Positions 36,553 through 52,161 of a stretch of 64,000 nucleotides of DNA are shown here, in pieces. The stretch comes from Salpingoeca rosetta (lineage: Eukaryota > Protista > Choanoflagellata): positions 2,382,615-2,446,614 of the forward strand of contig JAWQFM010000002.1 of assembly GCA_033442325.1 (NCBI GenBank). The letters are read 5' to 3'. A program made the position numbers and the translations under genes. The notes under the pieces were generated by a model. The model made no database searches. It was not told the DNA's origin and was given only the letters and a program-made list of their open reading frames with translations. The first letter of the stretch is position 1. The number at the start of each line of letters is the position of its first letter.

Positions 36553-38052
36553 AGCAAGCAAGGCCTTCGACCAACCACTGAGTCTGCGCCCTGAAGGGCC
36601 GCCTGCACGCTCGGTGCATTGTCGCGAAGTGATTGTCTTGCTTTCGCAGACACAGCGTCCACGTCGCTCTCCGGCATCTAGCAATGGACGGGCGTGGTTG
36701 CGTTTGAGTGTGAGCGAGTGCGTGTGCGTGTGATTGTGTGTGATTGTGTGAGTGTGCGTGCGAGTGTGCGTGCGAGTGTGTGTGATTGTGTGTGCGTGCA
36801 TGTTTTGAATGTGTGGGTGCACAAGCACGTGCATCGATGTACAAGGAAAAGAGACGTGTTGAACGCAGGAAGAAGCAAATAGCACGGCAGAAATGCCGAC
36901 ATCATGGGTCGTTGCCACTGTGTGTCTGTTTGTGCGGCTGGTGGACTGCAATCAAGCACAGCGCCCACATGTTCAAGCACAACACGCGAGGGCATCCATA
37001 CCTTGTTTTGCTCCATGAAGGTAAACGTAAAGTCGGATGCGTCTGTGAGGAGGAACCTACGAAATGGCAAGGACACCGTGAGAACGTGCATGACAAGAAA
37101 CCTCATCTAATCAACAACGTGGCGCGCACGCAAAAAAAAAAAAAAAACGTACACACGCACACACGCAAGCAGCAATGTAAAGCACAAGAGTGCGCTGCAA
37201 ACGAAGCAGTCATTCGCAGGGGGAGCGCGGCAAACACATACCTGTGCTTGTTGGCTTCGATGACAGCACCAAGGCGGAAGTCCTCAACACCGTACGCGCG
37301 AGATGTGCCTGGCACCTTCAGCTGGCAGCGCTCAAGGAACTTGCCTGCACGCGTGTTTGGGGGGGAGGGACGGGGCGACGGGGCGAAAGTCGCTGCTGTC
37401 AGCTATACGTATGCAAGCGTGTCGACGTTCACACACAGAGAGACAGAGAGATAGACACACATACATACACGTAGACACAGACATACGCCGCACATATACA
37501 CAGACACATAGACACACGCCCGCACACATACACAGACACATAGACACACGCCCGCACACATACACAGACACGCATGCATGCACAGACACCCTTACCTCCG
37601 GCGATGCCCGAGTTGCGCTTGCGGCTCTCGAAGATGGCGAGGGTGTCGTCGGCGAGGTAGAATGTGATGGCAAACTCACGGTCCATATCCACGGGGTTGT
37701 CCGTGTCCATGCGCGCCTTAAACTGCAGCGAGCGCGACCCTTCCTGACAAGTGGAACAGGAGGATGATGGGGGTTGCGGATGGGGGAATGTGAATAACAC
37801 ATGCATGTGAATGTGTGTTTGGGTGATTGAGGGACGGCGCAGGAAGAATCCCGGAAGCGTGGTCAATGGTGGACTGAAATGCAGGACACACGTGCACCCA
37901 CGCACCCACCCACACGCACACACACACACACACGCACACACACGCACACACACACACACACACACGCACCCCCCGGCACACACACCCACACACACACGCA
38001 CGCACGCACGCACACACGCACCCACCGGCACACACACACACACACCCACACA

Positions 38053-38095
<43 letters not shown>

Positions 38096-38104
38096 CCACA
38101 CCCA

Positions 38105-38196
<92 letters not shown>

Positions 38197-40339
38197 TGCT
38201 CGCACCTCGAACCACTTCTTGAACTGGCGCTTTGGGGGCTTGAGGATGAGGTGGTTGACGCTGACGAGCGAGTCCTCCTCCGTGCCAAAGCCCGTGTGCG
38301 GCGGTGTTGGCATGCGCGGGATCTCATCCTCCGGCTGAAACGCATTGGACCAGCACAGGCGCGCAAGCGTGAGGGACTCGTGTAAACGTGCAACATTTTG
38401 TTCATTTGTGCGGTTGTGCAATGGCTTGTGTAAGGGCTTCGGCAACCACTACTACGACTACTACCACCACCACCGTCACTGCTACTACCCAGCACCACCG
38501 CCAGCACCGCTACTACCATGCATGACTACCTCTTCGACGTGGATGGGCTCAAAGTGGTCCATGCCATACTTCTCCTTGTAGTATGCCTTTGTAAAATCGT
38601 CGCAGTCGCACAGCAGGACCGTGCGGCCATACACGTTGATCTCAGCACCAATCTCAAGGTCCTTGTCTGTGTAGTGTGCTGACTCGCCACTGCCCGTGTG
38701 CAGGCTGTCGAGAATGTGTCGGCCTTGCAGCCCTGATGTGTGTGAAGTGTGTGGGGAGCGTTGGGGGGTGGTGGTGGTGGTGGTGGTGAACAAACGATGG
38801 GTGTGAGCGAGAAATGCAGTGTGTGGATGGTTGTATAGCGACAGGGACAGGTGGGAATGTTCGGCAGAGCAAAGTAAGTGCCTCATGCACACACCTGACG
38901 GGGCAAAGACGTTGAGGAGGGTTCTGCTGGTGACGGCGCCCGGCACCTTGGTTTGGCCGTGGTGGTCCTGGCGGGCAAATCAAGCAGAAGCATCGGTGAG
39001 GATATAACAAAATAAAAGGTGTATGTGTGTGTGTATGTGTGTGTATGTGTGTGTGTGGAGAGTAGCATGAGGTTCCAAGGTTGAGTGTTGCAGGTGAAGA
39101 GCAACAAAATCAAGCAACACACACACACACACACACACAAAACACAAAACACACGCACACACGCACACACACACACACACAAAACACAAAACACAAATAA
39201 ACACATAAACCCTCACAAACACAGAACACACATGAAACACACGCACACAAAAACGAACATATACAAACACATAACCCCTCACAAACGCATAAACACGCAC
39301 CTTTGGCAGCTTCTGGCGCCGCAGGAAGACCCCTGGTCCATCGCGGCCGCTGTTTGGCTGCTGCACCTCACGGATCTCAAGTGTGTCGTCCGCAAGGAAG
39401 TAGTGCAACACAAGATACCGCTTCTCCCCAAACTCGCTGGACACCCGCAGCCACGGTTGGAGTTGCATGTGTATGTGGAGAAAGGGGGGGGGGGGGAAGG
39501 GAGGGGGAAGGGAGGGGGAATTGGGGTTGGAGTGGAGATTGGATGAGGGTGGACGACTAAAGGTGTGGAGAAGAGGATGCTGCTCAGGTCTGGCGGAATT
39601 AATTCCACGTGCACCAGAACACACAAAAAACACAAAACACAAACAAACAAACAAAAACACACAGACACACAGATACACACACGCACATACCTGTCAGAGT
39701 CGTCCCAGAGGCAGTAGAAGCGGAGGACCTTGCGGTCGTTTTCGAGAAACTGCTTGAGCTTGTCCTGGCGCTCGTATGGGCGAAGCGGCACCTGCGTCGC
39801 CTTGGCGTTCTACAAAAGTACGTGTACGCATGTGTATGTGTGTGTGCATGTGTGGTTTTAAAGTGGAGATGAGAAGCGGGAGCGTGAGGGTGAACATGAG
39901 GAGCGGTGGGAATGAGACCGGCTAAGACTGCACCAAAACACATGTCACAGCCACACAGCTGTTGAACACGGGAATGCACACATACACACAACACACACAC
40001 ACAACATGCAGACGTGCACACATCAACAGCACGCACCTCGCGGAGGGTTGAGTATGGGTCTGTTGGCGGCTGGAGTGGCTGGCCGACGCTGACGCCGAGC
40101 TTGGTGAGGAAGTCACGCGTGAATTTGTCGCAGTCGTAGATCAGGAACGTGCGCCCGTAGATGGTAATCTGCACGCGCACAGGGGAGGGGGAACAAGGCA
40201 ATGAGTCCCTGAACAGGCACACAACACAACACAGCACACAACACAACACCATACACACACGTGCACAACCCATATTTGCGCGTGCACTCGCATGAACACA
40301 CGTACGCGTGCACAGACGCACAGACACAGACACACGTGC

Positions 40340-40390
<51 letters not shown>

Positions 40391-40841
40391 CACACACACA
40401 CACACAAAGCAACGCAGTACAGCACAGCACAACGCAGCGGAACGCAGGACAACACAGCGCAGCAGTGTGCCCGCACCTCCTTGCCGACGTTGAAGTCCTC
40501 CACCTCGTAAAACTCGTCATCGCGCGGCGCAGGCTTGGGCACGCGGTGTCGTCGCAGCAGCTTGCCTGGCATGGTGGCGTCGGCAGCAGCAGCAGCAAAT
40601 ACGCACGGAATTGTGTGTCGGGTGAGTGATTAATGGGGAGGATAGGGTGCATTGCTGGTGCAGTAAACGCAGCAATGATAACACCATGCAGATACAGACC
40701 CAGGCAGCACCCAAACACAGCAAAGGTACACAGACACAGATACATGGGCACAGACACACAAACCCACACAACACACACAACAGCCACGCACACACACAGC
40801 CACACACACACACACAACACGCACACACACACACACAACAG

Positions 40842-40898
<57 letters not shown>

Positions 40899-41867
40899 AA
40901 CAAACAAACAAGCAACAGACGCACAGACACACACACAGACACAGACACACACAGCAGCAACAGCAACAGCTCACGCGCAACCGACCTTGCGGGAGACCGC
41001 TGTCTGCCTTTGGAGGCTCAATGACCTCCAGAGTGTCGTCCTCGGGAAAGAAGAAGATCTTGCACTTGCGAACGCGAAAGTGCTCCTCGCGCCGCTCGTG
41101 CACCGCCTCCTGAAAGTACGCGTCAAACGACAGCGTCTGCGCGTGTAGTGTGTGTGTGTGTGTTCGTGTGTGTGTGTGATGTTGTGTGTGTGTGTGATGT
41201 TGTGTGTGCAAGAAAGAAAGGGTGGAGACAGGTAAGGGGGGGATGGACGCATGCTTGGATCGAATGTACATCAAGGCGAATGCATGCGGACACGCTTGCG
41301 TCCAAACGGATGCACCTGTCGGTCAAAGACGAGCCATGCTGGCTGCTTGGCAACGGTGGGATCACTGCGCAGAGTGGAGCTGGGGACGCGCTTTGCTTTG
41401 TCTGCAGAGGGTTGCATAATTTGGGGGGAGGGGACGGATTTGGAGTTAGGTAACGTTGAAGGCTTGCAGTGCCTTGATCTGTGAGTACGTGCACACAAAC
41501 TCAAAAAAACAAAAACAACAAAGGGCAAAGCACAGCAACCGCCCACTGCACAAGCAGAAGCATGTAAGCAAGCACGCAAGCAAGCACACACCTGAATCTG
41601 AGAGGACGACGGGAACGCCGTTTGCGAACGTCAGCTGTTGCTTGCGGGGCTTTGGCGCCTGGTCAGTCTGATGGCACAAAGGAGCAAGGGCCATAGAGCA
41701 CCAAGCGTGAGCACATGTCACCGTGTCACCTGGACAACATTGAGCAGTCGTCTCCCACTTTGCACACGACACACATACACACGAACACACACGACCACAT
41801 GCTGCGTCTCTCTCACATTGAAGGAGTTGCCAGGGAGCGGTGGCAGCGTCGATTGGCGGAAAGCCAT
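35730..41867 (-). CDS. EFHC2: EF-hand domain-containing family member C2 (Rib72-type DM10 axonemal microtubule inner protein)
   Basis: [26 protein letters not shown]|[12 protein letters not shown]...[95 protein letters not shown]...[12 protein letters not shown] (three DM10 domains). The end is EF-like: [16 protein letters not shown]-stop. Confidence 0.92.
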
Positions 41868-41943: not shown

Positions 41944-44096
41944 GTGTGTGCGTGAGTGTGTGTGTGTGTGTGCGTGAGTGAGTGAGTGCGAGTGTCTGCG
42001 TATGTATGTGTGTATGTGTATGTGTGTATGTGTATGTGTGTGTGTGTATGTGTGTGTGTGTGTGTGTGAGTGTGTGTGAGTGAGTGTGAGTGTGAGTGTG
42101 GCACAGGAGGCAAGAAGAGTTCTTCTCGACTCGACGTTGACTACAGCTACATCGTCGCCTGCATCGCCGCCACAACAACACTCCCTCATCACATCACCGC
42201 CGCCTCCTCACCCTTTTTTCGGTCGCGGTTTGTTGGGTTTTCCTTCGCAACGGCAAATTGTGATGTCTGTTACGGGTGTGGGATAATTGCTGAGTGTTTT
42301 GCAACATGAATCAACACAGTGTATTTCCATGAAAACTTCAACAAACAATCGTACCCACCCATATTAGGGCATGGAATCATTATCAAAATAAAAGAAAAAT
42401 GACCACGCAAATGTAAAACATGTTTGAACATGACATGATCCTAATGCTTTTCTTGCTGCTGCTGTCTGTGGGCCTCTTCTGACTTCGCTTCTTCGCTTAG
42501 CGTGCAAGCACGTGATGTGGCGACGAGGGCAAAGACCAGAAGCAAGAACAAACACATTAAGGCAGAGCACCGAAGTGGCCGGATTGGCCAAAGGTGGTTG
42601 GCGTGGGGTTGGGTGGGACAGACCGTGGCCCACCGGTTTACGCCGGAGTGCCCCGCACTGTGGTGGCGAAGGAGCTAATTCTGTGATGTTTTGCTTCAAA
42701 ACTCCATGATCACTTCCTTGCACTTCCACACGATCGAAGTCGACCGTTTGACCCATGGGGGTGTGGCGTGGCTGGGCAACGGCGCGGGTCGAAAGGTGTT
42801 GCGTGGCGGGGCGGTTGCCGTGATGTAGCGTGCTGTGCTGTAGCGTGCTGTGGTGTGCTCAGTGGGGGTTGGTGTCGAATACCGGTGCATGCACGCAACA
42901 ACTTGTCCAGTAGCGCGCCACAGGGAAGTGCCAAGGGGCGTGTGTAGTGTTTTGTGTGGGGAGAACATCGGGACAAAACGACACGCTGCTGCGAGGCTAA
43001 ACACACGCCCTGCATTGCGCGTGGGCCAATGTGCAGGCCATGAGGCGTGGATGACGCCACGCGACGACAACTTGCTCGCACACCCACGAAACATCCGCAC
43101 AACCTTGTGCTTGACATGCAGGGCGCGGTTTCGGTTAAGCGCACTTCCCTTGCACATCCAAACATAAAGCCAAGCTGCACACTGACCAGGGACACTTAGG
43201 CTGTGTGTTTTGCTTTACGCAACGCGCCAAACAAAGAGGCAACACCACACGCAACAAACACACACACTTGTGCACACATGCACACGCGCGCACACGCACA
43301 CACACACAACAACAAAAAAAACTAAAACGGCTTGATGTTCGTTGGAGGGGGCAGGGGATTCGTTTGGTTGGTTGTGGCCCACTCGTTGTCCAAGCCAAGC
43401 CGCCAGCAGTTTGGTGCTCTTCCACAAACTCACGCACACGCACACACAGCACACAGCACACGGCGCGCCAAGCGCAGAAAGCAAAGCAAAAAAAAAAACC
43501 AAGCCAAGCCACAACAGCCAAGCACACGCACACGCACACGCACAGATACAAGCGCCAAGCGCCACCAGCCACCACGCCATTACACGACAGCATTGCCGTC
43601 ATCTCGTTCTATTGTTCTATTGTCGCGGCTCCACTTCCTTGTGAGTTTTGCCAGTGGTGTCAGGTGTTTGTTCATTTTCTACACCTCTGCACTTCCCTCC
43701 GCTGCACACCTTACGGCAACCGCTCATCAGCGACCCAGAGCGCCATTGACTGAGCGCGCCCGCTTGACGAAAGAACAAACGCAGAAGCAAACAAAACACC
43801 GCGCCACACCAGCAGCCAAGTTGTCTCCATTCGTGCCACCCCCGTCTCTGTTTCACTCATTTTCTCAACCTCCACTTTCTCCACCAACAGCATCGAGTGC
43901 GCGAGTTTCTCCTTTGCTGGATCATCTCTTGATACCTCCTCCACCACCATCCATTACAGCACCTCCAAGCAGATAACACAACACCAAGACAAAAAGAGCC
44001 GCAACAGCCACCAGCAGCAGCAGCACCAGCTTTGCTTCCGCTGAAACACGCAGTGTCAACCCGAGTTGCCCCTGCTCAGCAGCACAACATCTCAAG

Positions 44097-44187
44097 ATGC
44101 AGCTCAACATGAACATGTTGCTCCTCCAGCTCGCCCTTGTGTGCGCGCTCTTTGCCTCTGCCACGGTAAGCTTTGTTGGTTGTTGTG

Positions 44188-44229
<42 letters not shown>

Positions 44230-46528
44230 GGTTGCCTGCAGGCATGTTGTTGTTGTTGTTGTTGTTGTTGTTGCCTGCAGGCATGTTGTTGTGCGCCTTC
44301 TCCCTCCCTCCTCCCCCCCCCCCTCTCTCCTCTGCTTGTTGTCTCCTTGTGTTCTTTTTCTCCGCTTGCTTTCTCCCCCCCCCCCACACGCTATCCCAAC
44401 CCGGCTGCAGTGCCACCGTCGATTTCCGAGCTAGTCGGGGTTTACTTGGTTCCTTTTGCCGCCGGTCCCTTCTTGTGTCTCTTCTCTCCTGGCTTGTCTC
44501 TCCTTGCCCCCCCCACTCTTTTCCCAGCTCTCTCTCGGTCTCTCTATCTCTCTTCTCTCTCTCTCTCTCCATACCTGGTTCCGTCGCTTGTTTTCCCTCC
44601 TTCCTCGCAGCATTCGTGCTGTTTTCCCATGAGCAACAACAACAACACACAAGGGGGCTGCACTCGCACACACCCACCCATGCATACATGGTGGCGCGTG
44701 TTTTGTCATGGGTGTTGCGTTGCATGCACCATTGCTCGCGCCTCTTTGTGTGTGTGTGTGTGTGTGTGCTTTGCCGTGCATATGCATGCACTCCCATATG
44801 TGTGTGGAAGTGCAATGTGTTGCTCGTGTTTGGTCACTGTTTTGGTCTCTCTTCCATGGTTGCCGGCAGTTGTTTGCAGTTTGTTTGCAGTTGTTTAGCC
44901 GTCTCCCCTCCTCTTTGCTTGGCTACAAGCAATGACCTTTGCTCTCTACTCCTGTCTCCCTCTCCCTTTCTTTTTCCTTTAGTTCACCACCTGACACACA
45001 CGCACACATGCACATGTGGTTCTGCGCAACACGTCGTCACTCACCCACCAACTGTATCCTGCCTTCTTCTTCCTCCTTGCTTTCCCTCCCACCGCCATCA
45101 CCACAGAAGGCAGACAATTGCTATGGCCTTGACGTGTACGCGTGCTCTGCAAACGACGCGTGCACGCTGGACCTGGACGCCAACGACCGCCTGTACTGTC
45201 GCGCCTTCTCCTGCCGCGCCCTCCACGCCGACTGCGAGATTGACACCCACGGCTGCTACTTCAACACCGTGACTGGCGTCTGCTACCCGCTCGACACGGA
45301 GCCCGCATGCGCCGACTACTTCAGCGAGACCACCTGCCCAACAGACCGCTGCTCCTTCCTCTCCGAGCTCAACCTCTGCTACGAGGGCGCCTCGGTTGAG
45401 GCCATCCCTTGCGACGTCACCCACACGCAGATTGGCTGCGGCTACCTCCCCCACTGCGAGTTCCACTACATGTGGGACAACAGCTGGGGCGTGTGCACGC
45501 CACAGTTCCAGGACCCGCCCTGCTACCTCTACGAGCCCGTGCCCGGCCAGTGCCCCGACGACCGCTGCCTCATCGTCCCCACCCTCGAGATTGGCGTCTT
45601 CGCCTGTGCTCCCCTCCCCACCACCACAACCACCGTCCCCAACGAGAGCGGCAGCGGCAGCGGCAGCGGCAGTGGCAGTGGTGACACCACCACCAGCGGT
45701 ACCCTCAGCGTGCTCCCTCTGTCCACCTTCTACTCAACCCCAGCCCCTACCACGACGAGTGGCACCCTCAGCGTGCTCCCTCTGTCCACCTTCTACTCAA
45801 CCCCCGCGCCCACCACGACGAGTGGCACCCTCAGCGTCCTCCCGCTCTCCACCTTCTACTCCACCCCCGCGCCCACCACGACGAGTGGCACCCTCAGCGT
45901 CCTCCCGCTCTCCACCTTCTACTCCACCCCAGCTCCTACCACGACGAGTGGCACCCTCAGCATCCTCCCGCTCTCCACCTTCTACTCCACCCCCGCGCCC
46001 ACCACGACGAGTGGCACCCTCAGCGTCCTCCCGCTCTCCACCTTCTACTCCACCCCCGCGCCCACCACCACAAGCGGCACTCTCCTTGTTTTCCCTCTGT
46101 CCACCTTCTACTCCACCCCGGCTCCGTCTGCGGACAAGGCCAGCAGCACGTTCTCCACCACAACCGTGGTTGTCTTTGCCGTTGGTGTTGTTATTGCTGC
46201 CGCCATCATTGCCGTCGCCATCGTCCGTGTCAAGTAAGTTGCATGTCGATGTCCCTCACCTTGTTGCTGCCGTTTGCTTGTTTGCTTGTTTGCTTGTTGC
46301 ATCGACTGCACCTCTTGGATCTCAACACCCGCTCACCATTGTTGTGTGTCCTCCCACCCCACTCCACTCCACACGTGTAGGTCTCGGCCAAAGGTCCGTG
46401 TTGCCCACGACCTGAGCGCCGTGATTGCAATGGACGACCACGCCAAGGGCCGCGCTGCGCCTGCCTCGCTGAAGAAGGCCGCACACGGTGGCGTCGTCAT
46501 CCCCGTGGCCCCCGCCATCGACGTCTAA
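44097..46528 (+). CDS. Type I membrane glycoprotein: signal peptide, five 4-Cys modules, (SG)6, seven 21-aa Thr/Ser/Pro repeats, TM helix, short tail
   Basis: Exons 44097-44165, 45107-46233 and 46381-46528 join in phase with canonical GTAAG/AG sites. Signal peptide MLLLQLALVCALFASAT; TM VVVFAVGVVIAAAIIAVAIV followed by RVK; the tail ends APAIDV-stop. Confidence 0.88.
45686..46126 (+). repeat. Coding tandem repeat, 7 x 63 bp (TTTSGTLSVLPLSTFYSTPAP)
   Basis: Seven near-identical peptide copies with synonymous codon variation. Confidence 0.95.
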
Positions 46529-48008
46529 AGCATGCCGCAGCTCCAGCAATAGGTCGACGACTGTGGATCATGGCGGGCTTGGTGATGGGCTTGGTGATGG
46601 GGGTGGTGGTCAGCACCGGTTCAGTGAACTTGCCGGCCAACCCCTCTTTGCCAACGCTTACTCCCGCTACCACACGTCACCATGTCGCTCGCTGCGCGCT
46701 GTTGTTGTTACTGCTTTCCTTTCCCTTTCCTTTTTTCTTCTTCGTTTGTTTGACTTCTGGCAAGCCGCAGGCTGCTGCTGCTGCCCCACTCGTCACTCGT
46801 TCGCCCACCTCCCGTTTGTTCAACACCCGGCCGTTTATCTCCACTGTTATTTCTCTCCATGTGCCGTTGGTGTCCTCCTCCCCCCCCCATCTTGTTGCCT
46901 CAACACATCACCGCGTTTTGGCCTGCACTAGCTCTTCCACTTGTCCTCAACAGTGTCTTGCAGCAGCAGCTTGCCTGCCTGCCTGCCTGCCTGCCTGTTG
47001 GATGGACCGTTGCTTGTTGCCGTGCACAATCCGGATTGATGGCTTTGCTTTCCCGGTTGCGACTTGTGACGCGTCATGTGTCCACAGTTCCCTTCCCGGT
47101 CTCAGTCACATTCGCTTGTTTTTTTGTCTTGTGTGTTTGTTTGTCTCGTGTTATTTGTTCGTTTGTTCGTTTGTTCGTTTGTTTGTTTGTTTGTGTGTGT
47201 TTTTCCTTCCTTCTGTATGAACCGCTCTGTGTCAATATCGCCATCGCCACTTTCCATTCACTGTTTCACCAGAAAGCTTTCGTTTCTCTTTTGCGTGTGC
47301 GTGTCGCCACGTCTGTCGTTGATTGCGACTCGCCTCATGGCTGTTGTTGCGCCCTTTCGACGTGCTTCAGGCACACACACGTCTGTGTCTTCGCCATTCC
47401 CTGGCCACTCTGTGCGTGTTTCCCGCCCGACTTTTGTAATTTTTCACCGTCTCCTCCCACTCGGCGGTTACCGCCTGCCCATCTCTCTTCCCTGACGCAC
47501 GGATGCACGAGTATGGTTGTCGTTGTTGCTGTGGTTATTCGCTGCACCGACACACACGGTCGCGCGATGGCTACCTTGCTTTGCTTGCATGCAAGCAGCA
47601 AGCGCGCCAATCAACTAGCATCACCGTCTTACATGCTCGTTGCTTCTAATCAGTGGAGGCGGGAAAGGCAGCGCGTTTTCTGCCTGTGTGTGTGTGTATG
47701 TTTGTTTGTTGAGTTGCTTATATTTAAGGGCAACCCTTGTTTGGATGTATGGACGTGTGTGTCGTGTGTGTATGATTCCTTGTCACGTGTGGGCCAACCA
47801 CTCAACTCAAACTCAAACTCATTCGTTTGCGCCAATTACAACCAAATCATGAGAAAGTATATGTAGATCATGTAAGAACCACAAGGTGTTAAGTGGATGA
47901 CAAGGAGGGCTAGAGGGAGGGCGTGTGTGCGTGTGCTTTAAGGAGAGGGGGAACGTTGGCAGAAGGACAGCGAGCCAAGGTGTGCACATGCCGTGTGTAC
48001 AGTGCCGT

Positions 48009-48065: not shown

Positions 48066-51344
<3,279 letters not shown>

Positions 51345-52161
51345 CTTGGAGCGTTTCAGGAGAAACGGAGCTGATTACAGCCGAGGGGAGGCGAGAAGGC
51401 GTGCAGCTGTCTTTGGGGGGGGGGGGGGTTGTGGCGGTGGTTGAAGCTGATATGGAAGCAGAGGAAATGCCTCAACAAAATGAGCCGACCCGCCATGCTG
51501 AAGACGTGCAAGTAGTGGAGTACGCAATGAATAAAGAAAGCACGGGAGAAGGCCTTGCGTTGGCACGCTCGCTCAGCGCGTGCCGTTTCCTGTGTGCGGG
51601 GTGAGTTGCGTGCGCGAGTCGGGCGTGGTGTATGAGCGAAGCAACGAACGCAAAAGCAATCGTGCAGTGGCACTGAAGCAGGGGTGGAAGGAGTAGACGC
51701 AGGCGCAAAAGAAGGCGATGTTGATGCACAAGAAGACGATGTAGGCGCAGGAGAAAACGAATCAGAAGCAGGAGCAGAAGCAGCAGCAGTCGAAGCAACA
51801 AACAACGAAGGTTACGGTGCTATTCTCACCTTGCTTCTGCCCAAAGCGTGATGCCAGACATGCTAGTGGCTTCGCTAAGCTTCGCTGCATAAGGCCTGCA
51901 TGCCTCCGGCCCCTTGCCTGTCTTTGTGAAGCCTAAGCAATGCAGGCAGTGAATTGTGTCGTGCTATCATCATGCATGGCATCTTGTGTCGTGCTGATGA
52001 CGTGTGCTGGTGGGATGGCTGGTGCTTTGCTTCGTTGCTCGTGGCGTCAGCATCGTTGTGTTGTTGTTCGTTGTTGGCGCGCCCGATTGCCGAAAATCAT
52101 ATGAAAATGTTCATCAATGTTCAAGAATCAAAAAGGCAGCGGACACAGCTCAAACTACAGC

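What the first reader, a model, noticed from the sequence alone, without database searches (positions are those of the whole stretch)
44097..46528. Candidate chondroitin/heparan-sulfate proteoglycan core protein with a syndecan-like layout
Seen: signal peptide; 20 Cys; the motif NE-SGSGSGSGSGSG-D (45647-45682, six SG dipeptides flanked by acidic residues); a Thr/Ser/Pro repeat stalk; one TM helix; and a ~50-aa tail ending I-D-V. Established: clustered Ser-Gly next to acidic residues is the xylosyltransferase acceptor signal for GAG chains (serglycin, syndecans, glypicans), and hydrophobic-x-hydrophobic C-termini bind class II PDZ domains. S. rosetta makes chondroitin sulfate, and a bacterial chondroitin lyase (EroS) triggers its mating. 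Inference: if the host is a choanoflagellate, this could be a surface GAG carrier of non-animal design and a possible substrate in that signalling.
Basis: partly seen in the sequence, partly recalled or inferred. Interest (0 to 1): 0.75.

Follow-up and report, generated by a model that had tools for sequence, protein, structure and literature searches.

The report
Choanoflagellate surface glycoprotein, candidate proteoglycan
This is a real, expressed gene for a choanoflagellate membrane protein with a cysteine-rich head on a sugar-bearing stalk, and its Ser-Gly run makes it a reasonable but unproven candidate, one of several in this genome, to carry chondroitin sulfate.

Summary
A three-exon gene (44097-46528, +) encodes a 447-aa type I membrane protein. 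Both introns are confirmed by transcript contigs from two studies.

- **Layout:** signal peptide, 20-Cys head, N-E-(SG)6-D, seven 21-aa Thr/Ser/Pro repeats, one TM helix, and a 51-aa tail ending I-D-V.
- **Head:** five copies of an unclassified 4-Cys repeat with no Pfam model. The AF2 model is confident (pLDDT 89.7). It looks only faintly PSI-like. At least eight loci in this genome carry the repeat.
- **Orthologues:** two were found, in Barroeca monosierra and on a Tara Oceans contig, both with the same layout.
- **SG run:** the (SG)6 run itself is a young hexanucleotide microsatellite and is not conserved. An SG element does sit at the same head-stalk junction in all three: 3x E-x-E-A-S-G-D in B. 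monosierra, and a non-acidic G-S-G...S-S-G in Tara.
- **GAG machinery:** the genome, about 55 Mb and very probably Salpingoeca rosetta, has XYLT1-like, GT43 and CHGN genes.
- **Family:** it is not a syndecan or serglycin homologue.
- **C-terminus:** the PDZ-type ending is not conserved. V-R-V-x-x-D-L and I-P-V-x-P-A are.

GAG attachment is plausible (about 0.35) but untested. This scan flagged several other SG-bearing candidates elsewhere in the same genome.

The parts
43800..44096 (+). 5' UTR (at least this long)
   Evidence: The transcript contig of run X8 covers 43800-44164 and that of X7 covers 43911-44164. There is no upstream ATG in 43900-44096.
44097..44165 (+). Exon 1 CDS: 23-aa signal peptide (hydrophobic core, A-S-A before the likely cleavage site)
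   Evidence: KD mean 2.35 over residues 8-22. Splicing to exon 2 is seen in X7 and X8. The signal-peptide call is inferred from sequence; no predictor was available.
44166..45106 (+). Intron 1 (GT..AG, 941 nt), full of (TTG)n, (CT)n and (GT)n microsatellites
   Evidence: It is absent from the transcript contigs.
45107..45610 (+). Cys-rich head: five tandem 4-Cys repeats (20 Cys), each a short helix plus a beta-hairpin
   Evidence: Cys columns invariant across 12 relatives; AF2 pLDDT 89.7; top four structural rows are PSI domains, Z 2.2-2.5; no Pfam family.
45641..45649 (+). N-E-S sequon (potential N-glycosylation) overlapping the first Ser of the SG run
   Evidence: It is the only N-x-S/T sequon in exon 2.
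45647..45682 (+). (SG)6 run encoded by (AGCGGC)4(AGTGGC)2, flanked by E and D: candidate xylosylation cluster or flexible hinge
   Evidence: period 6, 96% matches; pLDDT 25-30, disordered.
45686..46126 (+). Stalk: seven 21-aa units (T-T-T-S-G-T-L-S-V-L-P-L-S-T-F-Y-S-T-P-A-P), each with one further S-G
   Evidence: Pairwise codon differences are 130 synonymous against 18 non-synonymous, and 14 of 17 variable columns are third positions. A related hydrophobic motif occurs in both orthologues.
46166..46225 (+). Single transmembrane helix
   Evidence: KD19 3.19; helix 352-374, pLDDT about 75. It is conserved in the orthologues.
46234..46380 (+). Intron 2 (GT..AG, 147 nt, phase 2)
   Evidence: The joint 46233|46381 is seen in X7 and X8. 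The Tara orthologue has an intron at the same place and phase.
46381..46528 (+). Exon 3 CDS: cytoplasmic tail and stop codon
   Evidence: It is single-copy in the genome.
46394..46414 (+). Conserved juxtamembrane motif V-R-V-x-x-D-L
   Evidence: Invariant V5 R6 V7 D10 L11 in alignment A3.
46499..46516 (+). Conserved I-P-V-x-P-A motif (contains a P-x-x-P core)
   Evidence: Invariant I40 P41 V42 P44 A45 in A3. Reading it as an SH3-type ligand is inference.
46517..46525 (+). C-terminal I-D-V
   Evidence: The orthologues end V-D-V and S-E-A, so the PDZ class is not conserved.
46529..46900 (+). 3' UTR (continues beyond 46900)
   Evidence: Contigs X7 record 5 and X8 record 10 run over the end of the laid stretch.

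Best explanation
This is a lineage-restricted type I surface glycoprotein of a choanoflagellate, very probably Salpingoeca rosetta.

- **Shown:** the gene is transcribed and spliced as modelled. It encodes a signal peptide, a confidently folding head of five disulfide-type 4-Cys repeats, a nearly uncharged Thr/Ser/Pro stalk of seven repeats whose amino-acid sequence is under selection, one TM helix, and a short tail with two invariant motifs.
- **Inferred:** the head is a ligand-binding or adhesion module held away from the membrane by a heavily O-glycosylated stalk. The tail couples it to sorting or signalling through D-L-x-x-[VI]-[IL] and P-x-x-P-type motifs rather than through a PDZ ligand.
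- **SG run:** in this reading, the (SG)6 run is a recently slippage-expanded version of an older S-G-D site at the head-stalk junction. It serves mainly as a flexible, glycosylated hinge. A GAG chain is absent or substoichiometric.
For: - **Gene model and expression:**
- **Head:** the Cys columns are invariant in 12 relatives. AF2 pLDDT is 89.7. At least eight loci in the genome carry the repeat, several in very long extracellular-type open frames with Sushi-like or TNFR-like repeats.
- **Stalk:** the repeats differ by 130 synonymous against 18 non-synonymous pairwise codon differences. Related motifs occur in the orthologues: T-L-N-L-S-P-I-N-T-V-Y and T-I-H-L-D-P-M-S-T-V-Q.
- **SG run is young:** it is a near-perfect hexanucleotide repeat and is absent as such from both orthologues. 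Comparable SG runs elsewhere in the genome lie outside secretory proteins, three of them in low-complexity ORFs without a signal-like start.
- **Tail:** the motifs are invariant in three species while the last three residues vary.
Against: - The position of an S-G element at the head-stalk junction is kept in all three orthologues. In B. monosierra it is a textbook acidic acceptor motif repeated three times, which argues for more than a linker.
- The organism makes chondroitin sulfate and must have core proteins (10.1101/139022).
- No ligand, localisation or glycan data exist for this protein.
Confidence: 0.5

Rival explanations
1. It is a true transmembrane chondroitin sulfate proteoglycan. 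In the Golgi, the XYLT1-like enzyme xylosylates one or more serines of the N-E-(SG)6-D cluster, and possibly the T-T-S-G-T sites of the repeats. The linker and a CS chain are then built. The chain sits at the head-stalk junction and would be a substrate of bacterial chondroitinases such as EroS.
For: - **Acceptor rule is met:** Ser followed by Gly in a disordered region, with acidic residues and no basic residues nearby (PMC5992326).
- **Partial conservation:** there are 3x E-x-E-A-S-G-D at the homologous place in B. monosierra. The Tara orthologue also has SG dipeptides there.
- **Machinery is present:** exons at G000 C10:1336088-1339192 best match human XYLT1 (E 2.6e-12 and 2.2e-7). GT43, CHGN and GT7 members are also found.
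- **Biology fits:** S. rosetta CS is shown biochemically, and its proteoglycans are hypothesised as the EroS target, with no core named (10.1101/139022; still none in 10.64898/2026.06.27.734982).
Against: - Only motif-level evidence exists.
- The (SG)6 run is a young microsatellite, and its length is not conserved.
- The Tara orthologue's junction SG sites lack acidic flanks.
- An N-glycan sequon overlaps the first Ser.
- SG enrichment statistics are inflated by tandem repetition.
- The family is restricted to three known taxa.
- This scan noted at least six other SG-bearing candidates in the same genome.
Confidence: 0.35
2. The SG run is modified by a Ser-linked glycan other than a GAG. One example is the phosphoglycosylation (GlcNAc-1-P on Ser) reported for Ser-Gly-rich domains of Dictyostelium cysteine proteinases, which I cite from my own knowledge and did not check here. 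Another is ordinary mucin-type O-glycans.
For: The SG run lies in a Thr/Ser-rich, disordered, luminal or extracellular segment. No evidence specific to this modification was obtained.
Against: I did not search for the relevant transferases. Chondroitin is the only Ser-Gly-linked polymer shown in this organism (10.1101/139022).
Confidence: 0.1
3. It is a diverged homologue of an animal proteoglycan core (syndecan or serglycin).
For: The layout resembles syndecan. There is a sub-threshold Pfam Serglycin hit (E 0.028, 14.9 bits against a cut-off of 30) that covers only the SG run.
Against: - No Syndecan PF01034 hit was found on the TM plus tail of this protein or of the full-length B. monosierra orthologue.
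- The tail motifs differ from the syndecan C1/C2 regions and the E-F-Y-A ending (my own knowledge).
- The Cys-rich head is foreign to both families.
- HMMER over 1.84 billion representatives found only choanoflagellate or metagenome relatives.
Confidence: 0.02
4. It is not a real gene: a chance ORF across low-complexity DNA.
For: The surrounding DNA is rich in microsatellites, and many spurious ORFs overlap it.
Against: - Spliced transcript contigs come from two independent studies.
- Orthologues share 44% identity and have invariant Cys columns.
- Synonymous differences are in excess in the repeats.
- The AF2 model is confident.
Confidence: 0.01

Closest known systems
Syndecans (Pfam PF01034)
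   Same: Both are type I membrane proteins with Ser-Gly sites next to acidic residues in a disordered ectodomain segment, a single TM helix, a short cytoplasmic tail and a hydrophobic C-terminus.
   Different: - There is no sequence homology: Pfam is negative on the TM plus tail.
- This protein has a folded 20-Cys head and a 7x21-aa repeat stalk.
- Its conserved tail motifs are V-R-V-x-x-D-L and I-P-V-x-P-A, not the syndecan C1/C2 regions.
- The PDZ-type ending is not conserved among orthologues.
- GAG attachment is unproven.
Serglycin (Pfam PF04360)
   Same: Both have an uninterrupted (Ser-Gly)n run.
   Different: The Pfam hit is below the gathering score and limited to the run (14.9 bits against 30). 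Serglycin is a small secreted granule protein without a TM helix, Cys-rich head or stalk (my own knowledge).
Thrombomodulin-type 'part-time' proteoglycans (my own knowledge, not tested here)
   Same: The order of parts matches best: Cys-rich extracellular repeats, then a Ser/Thr-rich stalk carrying an S-G-S-G type chondroitin site, then a TM helix and a short tail.
   Different: The repeats here are not EGF domains. There is no lectin domain and no homology, and the GAG is unproven.
PSI (plexin-semaphorin-integrin) domains, PF01437
   Same: Both are small disulfide-rich units of a short helix plus a beta-hairpin. The top four of 48,161 PDB representatives are PSI domains of Met, Sema4D and RON, aligned on repeat 4 (Z 2.2-2.5, rmsd 2.7-3.9 over 34-37 residues).
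   Different: Z is far below any convincing level. There are four Cys per unit rather than eight. Pfam gives no hit and Foldseek gives no hit with E below 0.5.
Unnamed choanoflagellate 4-Cys repeat proteins (for example Salpingoeca infusionum EP00049 P017541, and paralogues in this genome)
   Same: They share the same repeat, roughly P-C-x2-[YF]-x4-5-C-P-x-D-R-C-x-[FY]-x5-6-C, with E from 3e-13 down to 1e-9. At least eight loci in this genome carry it.
   Different: Those proteins carry many more repeats, or combine them with Sushi-like or TNFR-like modules. They lack this gene's SG element, stalk repeat and tail. The stalk repeat finds only weak compositional matches elsewhere in the genome, and the tail is single-copy.

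Membership tests
Syndecan (PF01034) | Conserved TM plus cytoplasmic C1-V-C2 region detected by the Pfam model | tested here: not met
   Pfam scans of exon 2, of TM-only and tail-only pieces, and of the TM plus tail of the full-length orthologue gave no Syndecan hit even at E up to 10.
Syndecan (PF01034) | Ectodomain without a folded Cys-rich domain | tested here: not met
   The 20-Cys head folds with pLDDT 89.7.
Serglycin (PF04360) | Pfam gathering score reached | tested here: not met
   The score is 14.9 bits against a cut-off of 30, and the match covers only residues 179-198, the SG run.
Proteoglycan core protein (functional class) | Enters the secretory pathway with the acceptor segment luminal or extracellular | tested here: met
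   There is an N-terminal hydrophobic signal with A-S-A, and a single TM helix downstream of the SG run. This is inferred from sequence; no SignalP or DeepTMHMM was available.
Proteoglycan core protein (functional class) | Acceptor Ser followed by Gly or Ala, acidic and no basic residues nearby, in an extended or disordered segment (XT1 rule, PMC5992326) | tested here: met
   N-E-(SG)6-D has no K or R within 4 residues. The segment has pLDDT 25-30.
Proteoglycan core protein (functional class) | Acceptor motif conserved in orthologues | tested here: inconclusive
   B. monosierra has 3x E-x-E-A-S-G-D at the aligned place. The Tara orthologue has G-S-G and S-S-G without acidic flanks. The (SG)6 run itself is not conserved. 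Only three taxa are known.
Proteoglycan core protein (functional class) | Host encodes xylosyltransferase, linker enzymes and chondroitin polymerase | tested here: met
   - XYLT1-like exons were found.
- GT43 was found.
- CHGN is at two loci.
- GT7C members were found.
- Xylo_C was not detected, but that search had no positive control.
- B3GALT6 was not tested.
- The literature agrees (10.1101/139022; 10.1101/211789).
Proteoglycan core protein (functional class) | A GAG chain covalently attached to the Ser | not testable with these tools
   This needs lyase digestion with a gel shift, or glycopeptide mass spectrometry.
PSI domain (PF01437) | Pfam model match and the 8-Cys pattern | tested here: not met
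   There is no Pfam hit in this protein or in seven relatives. Each unit has four Cys.
PSI domain (PF01437) | Shared fold | tested here: inconclusive
   The top four VIA-align rows are PSI domains, but Z is only 2.2-2.5. Foldseek found nothing with E below 0.5.
Class II PDZ ligand | Hydrophobic-x-hydrophobic C-terminus conserved among orthologues | tested here: inconclusive
   I-D-V in this protein and V-D-V in B. monosierra fit the pattern. S-E-A in the Tara orthologue does not.

The most novel reading that the evidence does not exclude
This would be the first transmembrane chondroitin sulfate proteoglycan core protein identified outside animals, built on a choanoflagellate-specific Cys-repeat scaffold rather than an animal core. 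Its acidic Ser-Gly acceptor site at the head-stalk junction is shared between S. rosetta and Barroeca monosierra. It could be one of the surface substrates whose cleavage by the bacterial chondroitinase EroS triggers mating. I put the EroS link alone at roughly 0.05-0.1.
Probability: 0.3. Interest if true: 0.8.

Novelty: new variant of a known kind. Interest (0 to 1): 0.5.

Why it matters
S. rosetta makes chondroitin sulfate, and a bacterial chondroitinase induces its mating. In the literature I could search, up to a 2026 preprint on mating adhesion, no core protein carrying that chondroitin has been named.

This gene gives a concrete candidate that can be tested genetically. It is expressed and membrane-anchored, and it has a serglycin-like acceptor run. 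Its closest orthologue has a textbook acidic S-G motif at the same place.

If the GAG is confirmed, proteoglycans would have arisen on non-animal scaffolds before animals. That would also give a handle on how a microbial enzyme is sensed.

If it is not confirmed, the gene still defines an unclassified choanoflagellate 4-Cys repeat with a confident predicted fold, and a conserved cytoplasmic tail worth annotating.

It is one of several SG-bearing candidates that this scan has flagged in this genome, so its individual weight is moderate.

Tried and rejected
- **Pfam:** scans of exon 2, the head alone, the TM piece, the tail exon and seven relatives gave nothing except a sub-threshold Serglycin hit on the SG run and noise.
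- **Word-index protein search, three times** (this protein's head, P0001, P0002): only self hits came back.
- **JGI metagenome scan** with the orthologue alignment: 148 pattern matches, none confirmed.
- **Foldseek against PDB:** no match with E below 0.5.
- **ESM Atlas** by features and by shape: nothing usable, TM no higher than 0.39.
- **Profile of the head against PDB sequences:** only CCCH zinc fingers (muscleblind, tristetraprolin) at E 0.004-0.4. I rejected these as a coincidence of Cys spacing. This domain is extracellular, has Cys rather than His in the fourth position, and the scores are marginal.
- **Six-frame Pfam searches for the xylosyltransferase:** Xylo_C found nothing and had no positive control. 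Branch gave only E 0.19 because the gene is split into short exons. The gene was recovered by matching single exons to PDB XYLT1.
- **Raw RNA reads of two 2026 runs:** 0 and 4 reads. This is no evidence of silence, because the 2011 and 2017 transcript contigs cover the gene.
- **AF2 of the whole exon-2 product with three sequences:** mean pLDDT 50.5, and 25-46 in the stalk. The weak beta tendency there is not trustworthy.
- **Paralogues of the stalk repeat and of the tail in this genome:** only weak compositional matches for the repeat and none for the tail.
- **Loose degenerate pattern for (SG)6:** it was swamped by (TGTGGN)n repeats and was not informative.
- **Joined product:** the spliced three-exon product was never searched as one sequence.
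- **Rejected readings:** syndecan or serglycin homology, a heparan sulfate carrier (S. rosetta yields no HS disaccharides, 10.1101/139022), and a conserved PDZ class II ligand.
Full report
**Observation**

The region 44097-46528 (+) holds a three-exon gene.
- Reading the sequence and the ORF list gives exon 1 at 44097-44165, a GT..AG intron at 44166-45106, and exon 2 at 45107-46233.
- A second GT..AG intron lies at 46234-46380, and exon 3 is at 46381-46528 (TAA at 46526-46528).
- The three exons sum to a multiple of three and give 447 codons. The split codon AA|G encodes Lys.
- Transcript contigs from two runs of different studies (X7, 2011; X8, 2017) show both junctions exactly. They run through the SG tract with the genomic length.
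- Two raw-read RNA runs from 2026 gave 0 and 4 reads, so expression there is low or the libraries are not comparable.
- The joined product was not searched, printed or saved.

**What the protein contains**

- **Signal peptide.** Exon 1 encodes a 23-aa signal-like peptide with a hydrophobic core (KD mean 2.35) and A-S-A before the junction.
- **Head.** The exon-2 product starts with 20 cysteines arranged as five repeats of four Cys.
- **Junction.** A T5 run follows, then N-E-(SG)6-D at 45641-45685. N-E-S is also the only N-glycosylation sequon.
- **Stalk.** Seven 21-aa units lie at 45686-46126 (63-bp period, 91% identity). Each carries one more S-G, so there are 13 S-G dipeptides in all.
- **Membrane anchor.** A TM helix lies at 46166-46225 (KD19 3.19; AF2 helix).
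- **Tail.** Exon 3 gives most of a 51-aa cytoplasmic tail ending I-D-V.

**Is the SG run more than chance?**

- The run is a near-perfect hexanucleotide microsatellite, (AGCGGC)4(AGTGGC)2. It is therefore evolutionarily young.
- The motif (AGCGGC)4 is rare, occurring at four loci in 55 Mb.
- I fetched four other SG tracts. Three sit in large low-complexity ORFs with no signal-like start, and one sits in a short 156-aa frame that may not be coding.
- SG runs therefore arise by slippage in any context. This is the only one of the five that lies in an ectodomain.

**Organism and machinery**

- The window belongs to a 55.45-Mb assembly, matching the published ~55 Mb S. rosetta genome (PMC4054682).
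- The nearest orthologue is from the choanoflagellate Barroeca monosierra.
- An earlier follow-up note of this scan also names S. rosetta. That note is unchecked and is not independent evidence.
- The genome carries CHGN-type chondroitin synthase homologues at two loci, one GT43 gene and GT7 members.
- A multi-exon gene at C10:1336088-1339192 has exons that best match human xylosyltransferase 1 (PDB 6EJ7; E 2.6e-12 and 2.2e-7, against 0.011 for C2GnT).
- Woznica et al. showed biochemically that S. rosetta makes chondroitin and chondroitin-6-sulfate but no heparan sulfate. They proposed that EroS acts on S. rosetta proteoglycans, without naming a core protein (10.1101/139022).
- A 2026 preprint on mating adhesion still names none (10.64898/2026.06.27.734982).

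**Relatives**

- Pfam finds no family. A sub-threshold Serglycin hit covers only the SG run.
- The word-index search found nothing.
- HMMER over 1.84 billion representatives found nine proteins. Two are orthologues at 44% identity.
  - P0001 comes from B. monosierra (EukProt).
  - P0002 comes from a Tara Oceans metagenome contig.
- The P0002 model reads into an intron. The true last exon lies about 210 nt downstream, after an intron at the same place and phase as intron 2 here.
- Both orthologues have the same order of parts: head, SG element, S/T-rich repeats with a hydrophobic motif, TM helix and tail.
- Further word searches and a JGI metagenome scan added no orthologues. The orthologue set has three members.

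**The head**

- The other seven hits, including Salpingoeca infusionum P017541, and at least eight loci in this genome share the same 4-Cys repeat.
- The repeat is roughly P-C-x2-[YF]-x4-5-C-P-x-D-R-C-x-[FY]-x5-6-C.
- It is often present in many copies, or combined with Sushi-like or TNFR-like modules.
- None of these proteins has a Pfam family.
- With a 12-row alignment, AlphaFold2 gives a confident model (pLDDT 89.7) in which each repeat is a short helix plus a beta-hairpin.
- Foldseek finds nothing in the PDB, and the ESM Atlas finds nothing.
- The exhaustive VIA-align search gives only Z 2.2-2.5. Its top four rows are all PSI domains (Met, Sema4D, RON) aligned on repeat 4.
- I read this as 'PSI-like at best, membership not shown'.

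**The stalk**

- The seven units differ mostly at synonymous sites: 130 synonymous against 18 non-synonymous pairwise codon differences. Fourteen of 17 variable columns are third positions.
- The peptide sequence is therefore constrained and is not merely a compositional spacer.
- The orthologues carry a related motif: T-L-S-V-L-P-L-S-T-F-Y here, T-L-N-L-S-P-I-N-T-V-Y in B. monosierra, and T-I-H-L-D-P-M-S-T-V-Q in Tara.
- AF2 gives the stalk low confidence (25-46) and the SG run 25-30, consistent with an extended or disordered segment.
- The stalk is almost uncharged, with three acidic residues and one basic residue in 186.

**The tail**

- Three-way alignment shows invariant V-R-V-x-x-D-L next to the membrane and I-P-V-x-P-A near the end.
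- The last three residues are I-D-V, V-D-V and S-E-A.
- A D-L-x-x-[VI]-[IL] sorting-like motif and a P-x-x-P core are the conserved candidates. That reading is inference only.
- There is no Syndecan Pfam match. The tail exon is single-copy in the genome.

**The GAG question**

Points in favour:
- Human XT1 requires the acceptor Ser to be followed by Gly or Ala and otherwise tolerates many sequences, with a preference for acidic residues (PMC5992326).
- N-E-(SG)6-D in a disordered, luminal, basic-free segment fits this rule.
- In B. monosierra the aligned position carries three copies of E-x-E-A-S-G-D, a classical acidic acceptor motif.
- In the Tara orthologue the junction has G-S-G and S-S-G without acidic flanks, and there is an S-S-G-S-G near the membrane.

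Points against:
- The evidence is motif-level only.
- SG enrichment against shuffles is 13 against 2.6 here, 4 against 1.4 in B. monosierra and 4 against 1.8 in Tara. These figures are inflated by tandem repetition and rest on few independent events.
- An N-glycan sequon overlaps the first Ser.
- This scan has flagged at least six other SG-bearing candidates in this genome.

I put about 0.35 on a real CS chain, and 0.05-0.1 on a role in EroS signalling.

**Verdict**

- The most likely description is a lineage-restricted type I surface glycoprotein: an unclassified Cys-repeat head on a constrained S/T-rich stalk, with a conserved tail.
- Its head-stalk junction carries an acceptor-like S-G site that, in this species, has expanded by slippage.
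- The closest analogy in layout is a part-time proteoglycan of the thrombomodulin type (my own knowledge). It is not a member of the syndecan, serglycin or PSI families.
- The decisive tests are experimental (lyase shift, Ser-to-Ala mutant, non-tryptic glycoproteomics, knock-out) and are feasible in S. rosetta.

Noticed in passing
window 37400-41300 (-): The upstream neighbour on the opposite strand is a multi-exon gene with several DM10 domains (PF06565; E 4e-15, 1e-10 and 6e-7 on three exons). It is probably an EFHC/Rib72-like flagellar protein and is unrelated to the finding.
   Followed up: partly
window from 50198 into the 50-52 kb bins: The apparent GC drop to 0.33 at 50001-52000 in the composition profile is an assembly gap (a run of N) flanked by long (CA)n arrays. 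It is not AT-rich DNA. The six-frame 'ORFs' of 400-490 aa there are artefacts of the Ns.
   Followed up: yes
G000 C10:1336088-1339192 (-), locus L015: This xylosyltransferase-1-like gene is split into many short exons separated by (GT)n-rich introns. It is invisible to six-frame Pfam Branch and Xylo_C searches, but single exons match human XYLT1 (6EJ7) at E 2.6e-12 and 2.2e-7. Whether it has a Xylo_C domain is open.
   Followed up: partly
G000 C19:426513-428531 (+) and C36:368183-368473 (-): Very long open frames (2227 aa and 7278 aa) carry many copies of the same 4-Cys repeat. They may be giant extracellular proteins of the same unclassified repeat family.
   Followed up: no
L002 (G000 C36:67907-71347, -): A paralogue combines the 4-Cys repeats with very long Thr runs and Sushi/CCP-like modules. 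The locus also contains a withheld or gap stretch of N.
   Followed up: no
L014 914-2429 (Tara Oceans contig): The deposited gene call for the marine orthologue (P0002) reads through the last intron into (GT)n-rich sequence. The real tail exon lies at about 2276-2429, and a signal-peptide exon probably lies upstream of a GAA-rich intron.
   Followed up: partly
window 44173-44292: Intron 1 holds a (TTG)n array of about 32 copies containing a 39-bp duplication. Read naively as an ORF from the ATG, it gives a poly-Leu 'protein' (44097-45272) that could mislead gene callers.
   Followed up: no
window 43885-44009: One X8 contig skips 123 nt in the 5' UTR with non-canonical ends (AA..GC). This is probably an assembly or repeat artefact in a (CAG/CAC)n-rich stretch rather than an intron.
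   Followed up: no
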